64,000 bases of DNA from Guillardia theta CCMP2712 (taxonomy: Eukaryota > Protista > Cryptophyta), in assembly GCF_000315625.1 (NCBI RefSeq), contig NW_005434671.1, positions 538,078-602,077 on the forward strand. The letters are read 5' to 3'. Of this stretch, positions 24,967 to 42,863 are shown in pieces; the first letter of the stretch is position 1, and the number at the start of each line of letters is the position of its first letter. The notes under the pieces were generated by a model. That model was given only the letters and a program-made list of their open reading frames with translations, was not told the origin of the DNA and searched no databases. The position numbers and the translations under genes were made by a program.

Positions 24967-25972
24967 CACTGCCAGCCACGAGGTCAATATGTCCTGCTGC
25001 AAGGAGCTCGCTTCCAACAGAATGGACCAAGTGAGCTATGGTTTTGTCTGAGTGAAATGAACGTGCATAGTCTGGAAATCACATGTTCTTCCTACCCACC
25101 TAATCCATGTATCATTCTTCAGCTTCGTCTACCCTGCTCGAATCATTGATTTTGCCTCTGAGTCTCCTCCCCCTCCCCTCTCCCCTCCTCTCTTCTCTCT
25201 TCTCTCTTCCCCCCCCTCTCTCTCCCTCCTTTCACTTCTCTCTCACACGCTCCCTCCCTCCCTCCCTCCTCCCTCCTCCCTCTCCCCTCTCTCCTCCTCT
25301 CTCCTCCTCTTCCCTCCCCTCCTCCCATTATCTCTTCTATTTCCCTCCCTCTCTCCTCTCCCTCCATCCTATTCCCAGCATTACTATCCCTGTGACGAAT
25401 CGGCCTTGAGTCTCGTCAGTTACCCACCGTTGCGTGCAGGTTCGATCCGTAACCGTTGTAACTGTTCCCCTTTGCGGCCCAACCAGATTCTTGATGGCTC
25501 AACTAGCGGGGGACGTGAAGAGGAGTCGAGGGGTGGACATGGCAGAGGGAGGGAGGGAAAGAAGAGACGCGAGGAAGAGCAGGCGGAGTGGAGGAGGAGC
25601 AGACAAGATGAGGAGAAGGGATGAAGGAGACGGGAGGAGCAGGGGAGGAAGCCGAGGGCGGGAGGAGGAGGAACCGACCAGGACTACGGGGAGAGTAGCA
25701 AGAGATCTAGATTGAGGTCAGGGATACGAAGCCAAGAGAGTTGGGAATGTGAAGTTTTCCATGTGTTCTGACAGAGGAAGGAAAGTTCAAGGTTAGTAGA
25801 CACGAGTAGTGTCGAGGTTCCTTCAGCGCCACTTCGCCTTGGCATGCTAGGGTGGTCCCATGACCTGGGCCCAAGTTCAACGGTAGAGTCTGACGGCAGG
25901 ACATGAACAGCACGAGTCTGTGACCGACCCTTGATCGTGACACGCTCCTTCCTCTCAGGTGCATCTGCCAGC

Positions 25973-28370
25973 ATGAGGATAGTGAGCCTGCTGCCTTCCG
26001 CCACTGAGATCCTGGCCCTCATCGGCGCCAAGGACATGCTGGTGGGCCGCAGCCATGAGTGCGACTTCCCTCCAGAGATCCTGAAGCTGCCGACCGTGAC
26101 CAACTCCCAGCTTGTCTTCCAGAGCTCTGCTCAGATCGACCAGGCCGTGCGGGAGTCCTCCAAGGCGGGGATAGACCTCTACGCTGTGGACGCGGACCTG
26201 CTGACGGCACTGAAGCCGGACCTGATCATAACCCAGGGCCTGTGCAGTGTGTGCTCCATCGATGGGACCAAGGTCCATCAGATCGTGAGGCGCATGGAGG
26301 TCCGTCCCAAGATCCTCGAGCTCAGTCCCAACACGCTGGAAGACGTTTTGCAGAACGTGGAGCAGGTCGGGGAGGCTGTGGGGCTGACAGATCGCGCTGC
26401 CGACGTGAAGCTCTACCTCAAGAAGCGAATAGAACTGGCGACGAAGACAGCAGAAGAAGGGAGGAAGAAGAGTGTCCATCCAGTCAACGTCGCCTTCCTT
26501 GAGTGGCTGAACCCCTTGTATATTGGGGGGCACTGGACACCGCAGCTGATAGAGATGGCAGGAGGCGAGCAGAAGCTGCACAACACAGCGAGGCAGAAGG
26601 AGGTGGGATTCAAGTCCTATGCCATCTCGCAGGAGGCAGTCACTCAGTCCGATCCTGACGCGATCATCATCGCCCCTTGCGGCCTAGACCTCGGTGCGAC
26701 TGAGACTGAGATCGCGAACCTGGTGCATGACCAAGACTCCGAGTGGTCGCGATGGTTCTGCGAGCTCAGAGCTGTGAAGGGGAAGCGCGTGGCTCTGGTG
26801 GACGGCAGTCAAATGTTCAACCGTCCCGGCCCGCGACTTGTCGATGCTCTCGAGTGGTTGTCCTCCTTCCTCTACCCCGACGCTCAGCAGCTCAATCCCA
26901 TCCGAAGCAGGTGAGGAATCTGCTGCCTCTCCTCTCTCAGATTCCGTGCAGTCGCTTTCCCTGGAAGGTGATGGAGCTCGCCAACCTGCCCAAGAAAGCT
27001 TGTCTCGCAACCTCGTCAGGCGACAAGGAGCAGCGAGATTCGCGTTCAGATCGGTACTCCTCGCCAGGTGTTGGGCACGCACAAGGTTGGAGCTTTCCTC
27101 TCGAGTGACTGTCTTGCAGTTGGAGGGTTTGGGCAGGACATTGAAGACTGTCACCGGCTGGCGATGGAGGTCTGAAGTTCAGTTCCCTGCTCAGGATGAG
27201 TGAGACGGCAGGCGGGGGAGGATATGTACACAGATCCTCGAACAGGCTTCATGGTCTTCACTGAGATGGCGGCTCTCAAGCGAGGAAGCTGCTGTGGCCG
27301 AGGGTGTCGACACTGCCCGTACGGGCATTGGAACGTGCAGGTACCCGGAGGAGGAAGCTGTCGCTCTTTGACTTCCGGCATGCAGAAGTTTCAAGACAGG
27401 AAGAACGTCGTTCGCAGGCCCACCCTCCTCCCACCTGTGCAGGCGAAGAGCAAGACGTTCTCGAGCTTGACCTTTGTCTTCTGGAGTGGCGGGAAGGACT
27501 CGTACATGGCGTACCTCTCGCATTGCTCTGCCATCGCTTCCACTTCGTCCGAAGCTCACGTGAGTGCTGCTCTTGCTTGCCATGGATGGCCGCTGAGTCG
27601 TGACAGGACAACGAAGTCATCCTCCTCACCACCTTTAACTCCTCCACGGGCATCATTCCCGAGCAGGATCTGCCGATTCAGAAGATCATGGATCAGGCCA
27701 AGGCTCTCGGAGTGAAGCTGCTGCTGGTCCCCCTGCCGGAGAACTGCGACAACGGTCTGCCCTCCTACCTCCCTGCATCGTCTCCCCTCCTCTTCTCACC
27801 ATTCCTGATGCACTCTCATCTCCCTCTCTTTCCTCATGCAACTTGGGTTCAGACGTGTACGTCACGCACATCCTCGAAGCCGTGGATCACGTTCTCGACA
27901 CTCTCGGCATCTCGACAAGCAAGCGGTCATGACAGACGAGTACTAAGGCGCTTCTGATTACTGCACCAGGTCTCAAGCTGTTCAGTTTGTGTTTGGCGAT
28001 TTGCATCTTCAAGACATCCAGCAATGGCGGAGGCAGAAGTTTGAAGGTGACCTCGCGTCGCCATGTAACCTTGTGACCGCCCGCATAGCAAGCGAAGGCA
28101 TCCCGTGCAAGTTCCCACTGTTCGACAAGGACTACAATGACCTGATGGACTTGCTCTGGCAGAAGCCCGTGAGCTCAAGTACCCTCGAGGAACCAGAACG
28201 CTGAGGTGTCTTGCCAGGTCACAGTGAAGATCAGCAGCGTCTGCTCCTCCCAGAGCTCCTTGAAAGTCGGCCAGACGTTCGACCGCGAGCTTGCGGAGCA
28301 GCTTCATGCCCGTGGAGAAGTCGATGCGTTTGGGGAGAAGGGCGAGTTCCACACGGAAGTCGTGCTGTGA
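25973..28370 (+). CDS. Fusion of a BtuF/TroA-like (cobalamin-type) substrate-binding domain, a Cys-rich DUF5522/C1orf53-like module and a Dph6/PP-loop ATP pyrophosphatase
   Basis: MRIVSLLPSATEI...VGRSHECDFP...FNRPGPRLVDALEWL; YTDPRTGFMVFTE...KRGSCCGRGCRHCPYGH; FWSGGKDS...FGDLHLQDIQQWR...DAFGEKGEFHTEV. Introns 26911-26951 and about 27069-27119 join the parts in frame. Confidence 0.75.
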
Positions 28371-28477
28371 GAGCCAACGACAGGGTTCTCCTGCGCGATC
28401 TCAGTCATTTATTCCACAATCAATTCATCCCTCCTTGTTATTCATTCTTTCACACTAGTGTTACAGCGGTTTTCCGT

Positions 28478-30251
28478 TTAGAAGTCCGACTCGCGAGACC
28501 CCGATCGATCTCTCCTCTCCCTCTGCCCGTTGGCGTTGTCATGTCTCTCCTTGGCCTTCTGGTATGCCATCTTCGCTCGCTCGAGATACGCTCCCTGCTC
28601 AACAACGGTAAGAAGCTGTGGGGGAGTGCGCAAGTCTGCTCACGTCATCCTCGTCTTCGCTATTGTACATGTGAGGCTGGCTGTTGAGCGGGGGAATGGC
28701 CTGCTGTGTCCGATTCAGTCCCAGCACGACCAACTCTTCCTCAACAGACCTTCTTCGGCAGGCTCTGGCAGAACTCGCTGAACTCCTCGTCGTCATGGTC
28801 ACCCACAGGTCCCTCACGCTCCTGTCAGACATTCAGCTCAAGGCAAGAGAACCTCCGACATGCTCACGTTCTCCCACGAATGGGCAGACGCCTGCAGACT
28901 GCCCCACGCGGGATGATCATTGAGGTGCATGCCAGGGCTCTTGCGGGTCGAGTAGGCCGTCCTTGGGGTCATGGGCGAGCGGCTGGGAGATCCAGGAGTC
29001 TTATCCTTCCTAGATAGAGACTTGCGGATCTTGGACTGAAGGTTTGACTCGACCTCGCCGTCCTGGTAAGCCGCTTCATCGTAGTACATCTTGGGAGACT
29101 GCTGGAGTGCATCAAGTTCAGACACTGGGAGGCGGAGAGCGATCTATCACTCACGCTTACGGCGGGCTTGCGCTTTTGCTTCTCTTCAGATCGATGTGTG
29201 GTGACAACCTTGCTAAACTTTGCGAAATCATCCTCGTCGATACCAGATTCAATTAGCTTCTTGTCGAAGTACATCTTGAAGTAGAGCAGAGCAAAGCCGT
29301 ACACTGTACAACAACCACGTCTCAGCGCACGAGAGTAGAATGTCAACTCGACAAACGAGGAAGCTGCACTCACCAGATTTCGCAATCACATCCAAGATGC
29401 AGTGGAAAATGTGATTGATGTCGTTTGAGATGACATTGGCCGCTCTGTATGAGAGAAGCCACAGCAGGGGGAACAGGAGCCAGATTCCTAAGGCGACGTC
29501 AGCGGCTGATTCAGAGACTCTCTCAGGACGTGACTCACCGAAGTAGATGAAGACTGCCGTCTTCAAGTGCCTGCGAGCCATGGTCAGCCGCCCGTCAGCC
29601 GCCCGTCCAATTGCTTACTTGAGACTCTGCTTGGCGTTGCTGTCACGGGCGCACAGCGTGAAGAAGTCGAGTCTCTGCCTGACGATGGACAAGATGAAGA
29701 CGTACGTGAAGGTGAACAGGACCATTCCCATGGCGAACCAGCAGTAGGAGAACGGAGCTACTGCCAAACTGCAAGCCACCGCGATCACGAGGCACGTGAA
29801 CACCAGGACCGCGCTAGAAATCTTGTACGGGGCATCAAGACACCAGAGCAGGTCCAAGGTAAGGAGGGGGCAGGTGGTGCAGTAGTCGACGTAAGGGATG
29901 ACTGTCAAAGGAGCGAAACCATTGTCGTTGGAGTGCGATTGCAATACCTTGGCGAAATAGGCAAGCGCACACCTGGCAGGAAAAATGTTACCCACCTTCG
30001 TCTCACTCGTTCCCGCCAATCTCACCAGAGATTGATAAAGACTGTAAGCATGTTCTGTTCCTTGAAACCATTGTAGAAGGACTCTGTACCACTGCAGGGA
30101 CGGGTGTAAGAACAGCAGCAGCAGTTTGCACAAGAAAGGATCACCCGGGGCCCTTGTATCGGAGAGAAATCACCAGCAAAATAATAAACGAGGCCGAGAT
30201 GGCAAGAAAGGAGATCCAGTTGGCGGTGATAACAGCGCTGCTCGCAACCAT
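28478..30251 (-). CDS. CCR2: Bacteriorhodopsin-like cation channelrhodopsin (cryptophyte BCCR, GtCCR2-like), 7TM domain plus long cytoplasmic tail
   Basis: Exons 30251-30145, 30091-30026, 29972-29619, 29570-29539, 29487-29374 and 29303-about 29160, plus tail exons to TAA at 28478. TM3 is IPYVDYCTTCPLLTLDLLW (P84, D87, T91, C92, D98). TM6 is IWLLFPLLWLL. TM7 is ILDVIAKSVYG (D219, retinal Lys223). The gene symbol rests on recall of the GtCCR2 sequence. Confidence 0.93.
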
Positions 30252-30529
30252 CGTGTGCAGACTTTGCCAACGACGACTGGGCACTTACAAACTGAGGGTA
30301 AAACCGAGACGAGCAGACACGGCTGGGGAGAGGGAAGGGCAAGAGCTGAGACGGCAGGGAGGAGGTTGAAGTACGAGAGCAGTAGGTCGGAGAGACTGCT
30401 GGAAGAGAGGAGGAGGAGGAGGAGCAGGCAAGCGAGTGGGTGCCGTCGACGAGGACGAAGCAGACGGGTGGACGTGGGACCAAATAATGGAATTGGGCCA
30501 GAGGGGACAATGACTAGAGGGTCCTAGGA

Positions 30530-31510: not shown

Positions 31511-31638
31511 CAAACGGGTAGGAGAAGAGTATTAATTGACTTCTGCCTTCATAATATTCAATAGAAAGATACTGAGGCGGACTGGTGTACCTAATTAAAG
31601 GGTGTGATCACGGGGCAGCATTTGAAGTTTCGTCCACC

Positions 31639-33300
31639 ATGCTGAAGATTGTGATTGTGGTGGCGCTGTTGGCGACGGGGACGGGGAAGACATGGAGCGA
31701 AGGAGAGCGGATACACGAGAACCACCTGAGATCTCGCACATCACCTGCCCTCTCATGCTGCATCCTGCTACAGCCAACCTCGCTGTTCGTCTCGTACTCA
31801 CCTGCGGTGAACGTGGAGGTCGGGGTATCGGAGCAGTGCGCAAGCGGGAAGAGGGAGTCAAGGCTGGATGTCAACGGACAGACTGTCAGCCAGGTTGTGT
31901 GCCCCTCTCGCTTCACTGTGAACTTGGAGCAGCATGGCCTGTACAACCTCACGCTCAGTGAGGCCAGCGGGGCAAAGAGCTCAGTGAGTTTCTTTGTGGC
32001 CCACAAGGATTTCTCTAATGAGCGGATATGGAGCCCTGCCAGCCTGTCCCTTCACTCTGATCAGAACAGGCCGCACGATGACGGGAAGGAGTGCGTAGAG
32101 GGGGCTGATACAAAGTTCTGGGTGTTCGTAGCTGCATGGAATGCAGCAAGATGGGTGAACACGACACTGTCAAGTCTTCGCCAACAGACCCACTGTAACT
32201 TCTTCTGTGTTGTTGTGGACGACGCGTCAACAGACAGTACGAGCTCGGTCGTGCAGGAGATGATACGGGGGGACGAGAGGTTTCTGCTGCTGGGGAGGTA
32301 GTGCTCCTTGACTTGATTCAGGTTCACCTTAATGAACAACAACAAGAGGCTCGGGGCGGCTCGGAACTTCTTCCAGCACATCTCCGAGCACACAAGCCGC
32401 ATGAGCGATGAAGATGTGATCGTGTTCCTCGACGGAGATGACTGGCTCGCCGACCAGAACGTCCTTCTCCACCTGGCTGAAGACTACTACCGAAACACGA
32501 GCTGCTGGATGACCTACGGAAGCCTAGGTCGAAGGAGGGGGTGGGTGGGGGGGGGGCATGAGGAGGAGGAAGAGGTGGTGGTAGTGGTGGTGGTGGTGGT
32601 GTGGTGGTGGTGGTGGATGAGCAGGAGCAGGAGCAGGAGGAGCAGGAGCAGGAGGATGCTCACCGTGCTCTCAGTCTACTTCCCGCATGGCATCGCCTCT
32701 ATCTCTCCTCCTTTCCCACCGAGTGTTGTGCAGTCCTCCTCCTACCGGGCAAACTTGCAGGCTCGTGCTTTTCTCCCCACTGACTTGCTAGCAGAAGTTC
32801 GAGTGGATCAGCACGCACCTCCGAACCGTCAAGTTCAAGGTCTGGAGGAACCTACGAGAAGAAGACTTCAGGTGCTCGCCGGCCCCTGTCCCCTGCTACT
32901 CCCCCTGCTGACGCCCCAGCAGGGGGCCCGAAGGGCGCTTCCTTGACATGACTGTCGACATGGCCATAATGTTCCCGTCCCTCGAGATGGTGCGTGTCCC
33001 ATGGCTCTGTGCGGCAACGCTGAGGAGCGACAGGCGGCAGGACGAGCTTGTGCTGTGCAACGCGTGATGTACGTGTACAACATGGCGAACGAGCACAATG
33101 ACTTCCGCGTCAGTGAGAAGCGACAGCTGGTAGATACCAGCTCCTCCATCCCTGGACCTCACTCCCCTTGCTACCCTCCCGCCTCCTCCCTCCCTCTCCC
33201 TCCCTCTCCCTCCCTCTCCCTCCCTCTCTTGTTTCCTTCCGCCATTGGGATTTCAAGACCATCTTCACGTGTAATGCATTCCACAGCAGCTCGAACACTT
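31639..33300 (+). CDS. Glycosyltransferase family 2 with signal peptide, multi-exon
   Basis: Signal MLKIVIVVALLATG, FVAAWNAARWV..TLSSL..Q, VVVDDASTD, FLDGDDWL (DxD), WMTYGS, THLRT, and YVYN. The 3' end is uncertain. Confidence 0.85.
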
Positions 33301-41664: not shown

Positions 41665-42863
41665 AGGAGGGAGGAGAGAGAGATGCTCCTGAGGGAGAAG
41701 AAGGGCAAGAAGGCAAAGCTGCAGATAAGTCGGAGGAGGAGGCGAACGAGATGCTGAACGGGCTGAACGAGTCGGAGAGGAGGATACGTGGAGCGCTGTT
41801 GATCGATCAGATGCGATCGGTAGAGGGAGAGGAGTGGTCCCGGCACGAGACATGGCAGGTCCGCCCTCGAAACCTTTGAACTTGCCCCGCACTGTGAAGT
41901 AGCTCTCCCTCCTGCTCCTCTTCCTTCACCTCCTCCCAGTCCTCTTTTGTCCCACTGACTCCTGTTATGCAGCTTCCCATCTTCGTCAAGAACGGGCCCG
42001 TCTCCTTTCTCCAGGTCTTTCCACCTCCTCCTCCTCCTCCTCCTCCTCCTCCTCCTCCTCCTCCTCCTCCTCCTCCTCCTCCTCCTCCTCCTCCTCCTCC
42101 TCCTCCTCCTCCTCCTCCTCCTCCTCCTCCTCTTCCTCTTCCTCTTCCTCTTCCTTGTATGCGCCCTCCTCTTCCTCTTCCTCTTCCTNNNNNNNNNNNN
42201 NNNNNNNNNNNNNNNNNNNNNNNNNNNNNNNNNNNNNNNNNNNNNNNNNNNNNNNNNNNNNNNNNNNNNNNNNNNNNNNNNNNNNNNNGGAGGAGGAGGA
42301 GGAGGAGGAGGAGGAGGAGGAGGAGGAGGGGGGGGGGGGGGGGGCGAAGTTGGGGGGGAAGAGGAGGAGAGATTGAAGTGAGTATGGCAGGACGAAACGA
42401 AGACGGAGAGCTTTCAGCTAGAGCACACGTTCCCTCAGAACCTCGCACAGGTCAGCCCTCTCTCGTCCTTTCCTTTCTTCCCCTCCCCTCCCCTCCTGTC
42501 CTCTCCCTTCCTTCCTTCTTGCCTCCCTCGCCCCTCGCACTCACTGCGTCGGCTCAGAGCAAGGAGACAGCAGATCACTCCTTCATCGTCGGCAACTGCG
42601 GCGCCAAGGCACCGGGCGAGTTTGTGCTGTCGGACATCAAGGAGGCAGAGAGCATGGGCTTCGTCTTCGACCAGGCGGCGGGTAAGGTGGACGCGGGGGG
42701 GAGGGTCTCGCTGCTGGTCAAGTACACCCCTCCTCCCTCCAGCCCTCTCTCCATGTGGAACGAGGTGACGGTCACGGGGGCTCTCAAGGGAGGCGATCCT
42801 CCCCCTCCCGGCGGCTCCCTCCCCTTGGAGATCCGCTTGAGGGGCTTCGTGGCGGCAGACTAG
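37668..42863 (+). CDS. CFAP74: Cilia- and flagella-associated protein 74 (coiled coil plus ASH/Ig-like domains), interrupted by an assembly gap
   Basis: N-terminal coiled coil, then QVVWGREFKG..F, FVDFEPGKTYKKKVTLTN, PGSLSPGMTC, IRFEPKINED and repeated ASH-like 'LDFG..' modules. The true start is probably in an upstream exon. Confidence 0.85.
42189..42288. other. Assembly gap (100 N) flanked by (CCT)n and (GGA)n
   Basis: Run of N visible directly. Confidence 0.99.

What the first reader, a model, noticed from the sequence alone, without database searches (positions are those of the whole stretch)
29160..30251. Intron-split rhodopsin with a proton-pump DTD motif but channel hallmarks: a bacteriorhodopsin-like cation channelrhodopsin
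Seen: the ORF track shows only fragments, but removing five short GT-AG introns gives a full 7TM opsin. It reads MVASSAVITANWISFL...GFKEQNMLTVFINLWCALAYFAK...IPYVDYCTTCPLLTLDLLW...IWLLFPLLWLLS...HCILDVIAKSVYGFALL. It keeps the bacteriorhodopsin D85/T89/D96 equivalents (D87/T91/D98), the D212 equivalent (D219) and the Schiff-base Lys (K223). R82 is replaced by Pro84 and T90 by Cys92 (the channelrhodopsin gate Cys). TM2 lacks the Glu ladder of green-algal channelrhodopsins and TM4 has no Asp. Established: this combination marks cryptophyte BCCRs (the GtCCR/ChRmine group), light-gated cation channels that evolved independently of chlorophyte channelrhodopsins and are used in optogenetics. Inference: this is a light-gated cation channel rather than a pump, possibly a phototaxis receptor. 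Caveat: from memory it closely resembles G. theta GtCCR2, so it may already be described.
Basis: partly seen in the sequence, partly recalled or inferred. Interest (0 to 1): 0.92.

Follow-up and report, generated by a model that had tools for sequence, protein, structure and literature searches.

The report
Known cryptophyte channelrhodopsin gene GtCCR2

Summary
Removing five GT-AG introns (48-70 nt) on the minus strand joins the ORF fragments into a 7TM opsin.

It has 10 exons and 9 introns (window 30251..28478) and encodes 433 aa, including a C-terminal cytoplasmic tail of about 170 aa with no Pfam match.

The spliced product is letter-for-letter XP_005841429.1 (GUITHDRAFT_99928, Guillardia theta CCMP2712). 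It is also 100% identical to residues 27-458 of PDB chains 8YEJ/8YEK, named "GtCCR2". Published primers for Gt_99928/XM_005841372.1, which a second paper calls GtCCR2, land exactly on the start codon and the last codons.

Published work on this protein already covers photocurrents, loss of channel current in D98N, loss of photocurrent in the Cys92-to-Ala mutant, the photocycle and a trimeric structure.

RNA runs gave only low-depth, unspliced contigs over the gene, so reads did not confirm the junctions here. Support for them comes from the functional protein and from colinear homologues encoded without introns.

Novelty: already known. Interest: low.

The parts
30145..30251 (-). Exon 1 (ATG at 30251-30249): N-terminus and TM1, residues 1-36 (last codon split)
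   Evidence: 24 model. 100% match to 8yej_A residues 27-60. The published forward primer for Gt_99928 starts at 30251.
30092..30144 (-). Intron 1, 53 nt, GT..AG
   Evidence: The residue count across the junction fits the PDB chain numbering.
30026..30091 (-). Exon 2: start of TM2, residues 36-58
29973..30025 (-). Intron 2, 53 nt, GT..AG
29619..29972 (-). Exon 3: rest of TM2 and TM3-TM5, residues 58-176. Carries P84, D87, T91, C92 and D98.
   Evidence: 117/117 identical to 8yej_A residues 84-200, E 7.9e-74. Residues checked.
29571..29618 (-). Intron 3, 48 nt, GT..AG
29539..29570 (-). Exon 4 (32 nt): start of TM6, residues 176-187
29488..29538 (-). Intron 4, 51 nt, GT..AG
29374..29487 (-). Exon 5: TM6 and most of TM7, residues 187-225. 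Carries D219 and the Schiff-base K223.
   Evidence: Pfam Bac_rhodopsin E 5.7e-08 on this exon alone. Also.
29304..29373 (-). Intron 5, 70 nt, GT..AG
   Evidence: The junction AKS|VYGF is seen in the PDB chain (second alignment).
29155..29303 (-). Exon 6: end of TM7 and start of the cytoplasmic tail, residues 225-275.
   Evidence: The PDB chain reads ...KRKPAVS|QSPKMYY.
29102..29154 (-).
28868..29101 (-). Exon 7: cytoplasmic tail, residues 276-353
   Evidence: Match to 8yej_A residues 296-378. Also.
28822..28867 (-). Intron 7, 46 nt, GT..AG
28750..28821 (-). Exon 8: tail, residues 354-377
28701..28749 (-). Intron 8, 49 nt, GT..AG
28644..28700 (-). Exon 9: tail, residues 378-396
28595..28643 (-). 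Intron 9, 49 nt, GT..AG
   Evidence: The junction EDEDD|GAYLER is seen in the PDB chain.
28478..28594 (-). Exon 10: tail, residues 397-433, plus the TAA stop (28480-28478)
   Evidence: The published reverse primer for Gt_99928 lies at 28481-28495.

Best explanation
Window 30251..28478 (minus strand) is the Guillardia theta CCMP2712 nuclear gene GUITHDRAFT_99928, known as GtCCR2. It has 10 exons and encodes 433 aa. The product is a retinal-binding 7TM microbial rhodopsin of the bacteriorhodopsin-like cation channelrhodopsin (BCCR) family, followed by a cytoplasmic tail of about 170 aa that has no recognised domain. The mechanism below comes from published work on this same protein and was not tested here. 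Light isomerises retinal bound to K223, and the Schiff-base proton moves to D87. Channel opening needs deprotonation of D98 towards a cytoplasmic acceptor. The Schiff base is then reprotonated from D87, so there is no net proton pumping, and cations (mainly Na+, also H+) flow passively. The protein is a trimer. Its role in the alga, for example as a photomotility receptor, is an inference.
For: My spliced 433-aa model equals database protein P0002 exactly. P0002 is EKX54449.1/XP_005841429.1, GUITHDRAFT_99928, Guillardia theta CCMP2712. It is 100% identical to PDB 8yej_A/8yek 'GtCCR2' residues 27-458, E 2.7e-301 (exon by exon). Primers published for Gt_99928/XM_005841372.1 (PMC7714340) hit at 30251 and at 28481-28495. 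PMC10172181 equates GtCCR2 with XM_005841372 and reports photocurrents with tau-off 11 ms and EC50 1.2 mW/mm2. PMC7175095 reports that D98N abolishes channel current and that the Cys(T90 position)-to-Ala mutant abolishes photocurrents in GtCCR2. PMC13078637 gives the gating model with D98 as donor and D87 as acceptor, and calls it a Na+-selective BCCR with a high-resolution structure. bioRxiv 10.64898/2026.10.19.760008 describes the trimer, maps D87/D219 to BR D85/D212, and reports a D219-K223 contact of 2.8 A in 8YEJ. The own genome has 87 Mb in 669 contigs.
Against: RNA-level proof of the junctions was not obtained. Three 'RNA?' runs gave only low-depth (3-4x) contigs that run unspliced through introns 1, 2, 3, 4 and 9, and a raw-read RNA run gave 2 reads. 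Gt_99928 is absent from the RT-qPCR primer table of PMC7714340, so native expression is not documented in what I read. RefSeq still labels the protein 'hypothetical protein'. The deposited sequences may derive from the gene model of this same genome, so identity to them is not independent proof of splicing.
Confidence: 0.97

Rival explanations
1. It is a light-driven outward proton pump, as the DTD motif would suggest on its own.
For: D87/T91/D98, D219 and K223 match the bacteriorhodopsin pump residues. By sequence it lies nearer to pump rhodopsins than to chlorophyte channelrhodopsins: BR, archaerhodopsins and cyanobacterial pumps are in the top 60 PDB hits and chlorophyte ChRs are not.
Against: Published recordings of the identical protein show passive cation currents. 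All five GtCCRs gave I-V relations with inward rectification, D98N removes channel current, and the Schiff-base proton returns from the acceptor so no vectorial transport occurs. R82 is replaced by Pro84 and T90 by Cys92.
Confidence: 0.01
2. The locus is a silent or barely expressed gene model. The protein works when synthesised but is hardly made in the alga, or is made with different splicing in the tail.
For: Only unspliced low-depth contigs and 2 raw reads lie over the gene, while the neighbouring + strand gene is covered at 10-19x and is spliced. The gene is not in the RT-qPCR table of PMC7714340.
Against: All nine introns are short GT-AG introns that keep the frame. Homologues P0003 (281 aa on an 1151-nt contig) and P0004 (312 aa on a 1351-nt contig) are encoded without introns. 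P0003 runs without gaps across all five 7TM junctions, and P0004, which starts at residue 49, across the four it covers. The full-length product folds into a solved trimeric 7TM structure. Low expression in a few culture conditions is not absence.
Confidence: 0.1
3. It is a paralogue (GtCCR1 or another Clade-D rhodopsin) rather than GtCCR2.
For: G. theta has 42-46 rhodopsin genes. A 73%-identical paralogue sits at G000:C178:89716-90760.
Against: Identity to the PDB chain named GtCCR2 is 100% over 432 aligned residues. The primers for XM_005841372.1 match exactly. Paralogues are at most 73% identical.
Confidence: 0.005

Closest known systems
GtCCR2 (Guillardia theta cation channelrhodopsin 2; GUITHDRAFT_99928, XP_005841429.1, PDB 8YEJ/8YEK)
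   Same: Everything: 433/433 residues.
   Different: Nothing in the protein. The PDB chain adds 25 N-terminal and 6 C-terminal construct residues.
GtCCR1 and HpCCR (same BCCR sub-branch)
   Same: Same sub-branch of the BCCR tree according to PMC7175095. The genomic paralogue at C178 is 73% identical in TM3-TM5 and is also split by introns.
   Different: A different locus. In homologues P0003 and P0004 the BR-R82 position is Arg, whereas here it is Pro84.
GtCCR4 (PDB 8YEL) and ChRmine (PDB 7W9W, 7SFJ, 7SHS)
   Same: BCCR family, with the TCP motif in TM3, the DTD-type residues, and TM7 D and K. E 1.2e-47 and about 1e-44.
   Different: Other BCCR sub-branches. GtCCR4 is about 48-fold more light-sensitive than GtCCR2.
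HcKCR1, HcKCR2 and HcCCR (stramenopile kalium/cation channelrhodopsins)
   Same: Related by sequence (E 1e-16 to 1e-22). A shared gating mechanism through the D96-homologue is reported.
   Different: A different lineage. The KCRs are K+-selective, whereas GtCCR2 is described as Na+-selective.
Bacteriorhodopsin (Halobacterium salinarum)
   Same: 7TM retinal fold, equivalents of D85/T89/D96/D212/K216, and a trimer.
   Different: BR is a pump, not a channel. BR R82 and T90 are replaced here by P84 and C92. E is only about 2e-07.

Membership tests
Microbial (type 1) rhodopsin | 7TM Bac_rhodopsin domain above the Pfam gathering score | tested here: met
   PF01036 at 65.1 bits against a cut-off of 24.6, residues 45-233.
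Microbial (type 1) rhodopsin | Schiff-base lysine in TM7 (BR K216 position) | tested here: met
   K223 sits in DVIAKS. The column is conserved in all 17 aligned homologues. It is named as the retinal lysine of GtCCR2.
Bacteriorhodopsin-like cation channelrhodopsins (BCCR) | DTD motif in TM3 (BR D85/T89/D96 positions) | tested here: met
   D87, T91 and D98. The correspondence is stated.
Bacteriorhodopsin-like cation channelrhodopsins (BCCR) | Cys at the BR T90 position (TCP motif), needed for photocurrent | tested here: met
   C92. Conserved in the aligned BCCR homologues. The Cys-to-Ala mutant of GtCCR2 has no photocurrent.
Bacteriorhodopsin-like cation channelrhodopsins (BCCR) | Closest relatives are cryptophyte BCCRs, not chlorophyte channelrhodopsins | tested here: met
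   The top PDB hits are GtCCR2, GtCCR4 and ChRmine, then KCRs, then pumps. No chlorophyte ChR is among the best 60.
Bacteriorhodopsin-like cation channelrhodopsins (BCCR) | Light-gated passive cation conductance | not testable with these tools
   Published for the identical sequence (PMC10172181, PMC7175095, PMC13078637).
Bacteriorhodopsin-like cation channelrhodopsins (BCCR) | Trimeric assembly | not tested
   Reported for PDB 8YEJ in bioRxiv 10.64898/2026.10.19.760008. I ran no structure or complex job because a solved structure of the identical protein exists.
Chlorophyte channelrhodopsins (ChR1/ChR2 type) | Glu ladder in TM2 and the DC-gate Asp in TM4 | tested here: not met
   There is no Glu in residues 48-68 and no Asp in residues 106-130.

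The most novel reading that the evidence does not exclude
The unexplored part is the C-terminal tail of about 170 aa (residues ~260-433, four extra exons). It has no Pfam match. It carries three weakly similar acidic 'K/H-M-Y-x-D/S...' stretches at about residues 234-251, 278-295 and 382-399. Such a tail could control localisation or regulation of the channel in the alga. Separately, tight convergent packing with the neighbouring gene (stop codons 107 nt apart) could lower its expression through overlapping 3' ends. Neither idea was tested, and most functional work used truncated constructs (residues 1-300).
Probability: 0.1. Interest if true: 0.3.

Novelty: already known. Interest (0 to 1): 0.06.

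Why it matters
It matters little as a discovery. [quoted passage not shown] The result is useful as a calibration: a tool-less reader reconstructed a five-intron 7TM domain and named the protein correctly. RefSeq still calls the product a 'hypothetical protein', so the annotation could be updated. The exact 10-exon structure and the lack of read-level support for its junctions are recorded here.

Tried and rejected
1. RNA-seq confirmation of the junctions. Four runs from four studies were laid. No joint was reported over the gene. Contigs at 3-4x depth ran unspliced through introns 1, 2, 3, 4 and 9, and the raw-read RNA run gave 2 reads. This is uninformative about splicing: it could be low expression, pre-mRNA or DNA carry-over.

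2. The look-up of encoding contigs for the exact protein returned nothing. The tool says records of the window's own genome may be left out.

3. The search of earlier findings by place returned nothing.

4. My recollection that GtCCR2 was JGI model 146828 was wrong. In PMC7714340 that ID has different primers, and the primers that match this locus belong to Gt_99928.

5. The PDB chain reads KPAVS|QSPK, which puts the donor at 29154 (GTGAGT).

6. I ran no structure prediction, fold search or complex prediction, because an experimental structure of the identical sequence exists.

7. Pfam on the tail (residues 255-433) found nothing.

Full report
**Observation.** The region was read on both strands. 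The coding strand is the minus strand. In a script I joined the ORF fragments at GT..AG boundaries. The five introns are 30144-30092, 30025-29973, 29618-29571, 29538-29488 and 29373-29304, with lengths of 53, 53, 48, 51 and 70 nt. Removing them gives one open frame starting at the ATG at 30251. The residues are P84, D87, T91, C92, P93, D98, D219 and K223. There is no Glu in residues 48-68 (TM2) and no Asp in residues 106-130 (TM4).

**Extent of the gene.** PDB chain 8yej_A matched the downstream frame as well. It reads ...KRKPAVS|QSPKMYY..., which places the exon 6 donor at 29154 (GTGAGT) and the acceptor at 29102. Three more short introns follow. The full model has 10 exons (30251-30145, 30091-30026, 29972-29619, 29570-29539, 29487-29374, 29303-29155, 29101-28868, 28821-28750, 28700-28644 and 28594-28478 including TAA). 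It has 9 GT-AG introns of 46-70 nt and a product of 433 aa.

**Identity.**
- Exon 3 alone is 117/117 identical to PDB 8yej_A, molecule name "GtCCR2", E 7.9e-74. Exons 1, 6 and 7 are likewise identical.
- An exhaustive HMMER search with exon 3 returned P0002 (433 aa, 100%). My spliced model equals P0002 letter for letter.
- P0002 is EKX54449.1/XP_005841429.1, [quoted passage not shown]. Its 90% cluster also holds the 464-aa construct named GtCCR2.
- P0002 aligns to 8yej_A residues 27-458 without a single difference, E 2.7e-301.
- PMC7714340 lists primers for Gt_99928/XM_005841372.1. Their gene-specific parts map to 30251 (start codon) and to 28481-28495 (the last five codons).
- PMC10172181 states that GtCCR2 is XM_005841372.
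- The window's genome has 87.1 Mb in 669 contigs, and the window is contig 3:538078-602077.

**What it does (from the literature on this same protein; not tested here).**
- GtCCR1 and GtCCR2 were the first characterised cryptophyte BCCRs. They keep the DTD motif of proton pumps but conduct cations passively. Channel opening requires deprotonation of the D96 homologue, Asp98, and the Schiff base is reprotonated from the acceptor, which prevents vectorial proton transport. D98N abolishes channel current, and replacing the Cys at the T90 position with Ala abolishes photocurrents in GtCCR2 (PMC7175095).
- PMC13078637 repeats the model (Asp98 donor, Asp87 acceptor), calls GtCCR2 a Na+-selective BCCR, used residues 1-300 (GenBank KU761992), and notes that a high-resolution structure exists.
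- PMC10172181 reports photocurrents under 530-nm light, inward rectification, tau-off of 11 ms and EC50 of 1.2 mW/mm2.
- A 2026 preprint that uses PDB 8YEJ describes a trimer. It maps D87/D219 to BR D85/D212 and reports a D219-K223 distance of 2.8 A.
D87 is discussed there as the proton acceptor.

**Family placement.**
- Pfam Bac_rhodopsin scores 65.1 bits against a cut-off of 24.6.
- Among solved structures the order is GtCCR2, GtCCR4 (1.2e-47), ChRmine (about 1e-44), HcKCR/HcCCR/BlChR2 (1e-16 to 1e-22), then cyanobacterial and haloarchaeal pumps including bacteriorhodopsin (about 2e-07). No chlorophyte channelrhodopsin is among the best 60.
- In an alignment of 17 homologues, D87, C92-P93, D98, D219 and K223 are conserved, while the BR-R82 position varies (Pro here, Arg in the closest two). 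This agrees with PMC7175095.

**Support for the splice junctions.**
- Read evidence was poor. Three runs of guessed RNA type gave contigs at 3-4x depth that pass unspliced through introns 1, 2, 3, 4 and 9. A 2026 raw-read RNA run gave 2 reads from about 6% of its data, and no joints were listed.
- In the same runs the neighbouring + strand gene is covered at 10-19x and is spliced (intron 28169-28217, GT..AG on +). The runs therefore do contain mRNA, and GtCCR2 is simply rare in them.
- Gt_99928 is not in the RT-qPCR primer table of PMC7714340.
- The junctions therefore rest on four other points. All nine introns are GT-AG and keep the frame. The product is identical to a protein that is functional and folds into a solved 7TM trimer. 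Homologues run without gaps across the five 7TM junctions in the alignment. And P0003 (281 aa on an 1151-nt contig) and P0004 (312 aa on a 1351-nt contig) are encoded without interruption.
- The deposited GtCCR2 sequences may descend from this genome's gene model, so identity with them is not independent proof.

**Surroundings.**
- No second rhodopsin lies in the window (tblastn).
- Elsewhere in the genome the best paralogue (73% in TM3-TM5, also intron-split) is at C178:89716-90760. Weaker ones lie on C27, C64, C56 and C32.
- Downstream, on the + strand and convergent, lies a gene with Peripla_BP_2 (25931-26911) and DUF5522 (27200-) domains. Its stop codon is at 28368-28370, only 107 nt from the GtCCR2 stop.
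- Upstream, at 31.6-32.9 kb on the + strand, there is a glycosyltransferase family 2 match.

**Verdict.** The remaining open points are minor: native expression, the splicing of the tail exons, and the function of the tail, which has no Pfam match.

Noticed in passing
window 25931-28498 (+): A convergent neighbour gene on the + strand has a Peripla_BP_2 domain (25931-26911, E 8e-13) and a DUF5522 domain (27200-, E 3.5e-21). It is spliced at 28169-28217 in RNA contigs at 10-19x depth. Its stop codon at 28368-28370 lies 107 nt from the GtCCR2 stop, and its contigs reach 28490-28498, inside the last GtCCR2 codons. Contig ends do not show RNA ends, so 3' overlap is only suggested.
   Followed up: partly
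window 28478-30251 (-): RefSeq and UniProt still name the product 'hypothetical protein GUITHDRAFT_99928' / 'Uncharacterized protein L1K1K8', although it is the published and structurally solved GtCCR2.
   Followed up: yes
window 29465-29871, 29885-30094, 30049-30205, 28477-28718: Low-depth (3-4x) contigs from runs labelled as probable RNA cover GtCCR2 exons together with their introns, unspliced. This points to pre-mRNA or DNA carry-over and to very low expression of the gene in those samples.
   Followed up: partly
protein P0001 (ENA, 151 aa), matching window ~29620-30070 (-): A 99%-identical ORF from another public assembly covers exon 3 and reads on through intron 2 without a stop. It has one substitution in the exon (N73D) and several in the intron. 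It is likely an allele or sister strain of G. theta sampled as unspliced DNA.
   Followed up: no
GtCCR2 residues ~234-251, 278-295 and 382-399 (window exons 6, 7, 9-10): Three weakly similar acidic stretches beginning K/H-M-Y (KMYFDKK..., KMYYDEAAY..., HMYNSEDEDD...) appeared as sub-threshold HMMER self-alignments. The tail has no Pfam match and aligns poorly among homologues.
   Followed up: partly
G000:C178:89716-90760 (-): The closest genomic paralogue is 73% identical over TM3-TM5 and is also split into short exons. It is probably GtCCR1, but this was not checked.
   Followed up: no
window 31585-32943 (+): Upstream ORFs show a Glycos_transf_2 match (E 2e-08). They are followed by a low-complexity Glu/Val/Trp/Arg-Ser run inside the ORF at 32332-32943.
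   Followed up: no
window 42189-42288: A run of 100 N, which is an assembly gap or a masked stretch.
   Followed up: no
window 30396-30434: A (GAG)n-type simple repeat lies about 150 nt upstream of the GtCCR2 start codon. Read laying skipped it as a repeat.
   Followed up: no
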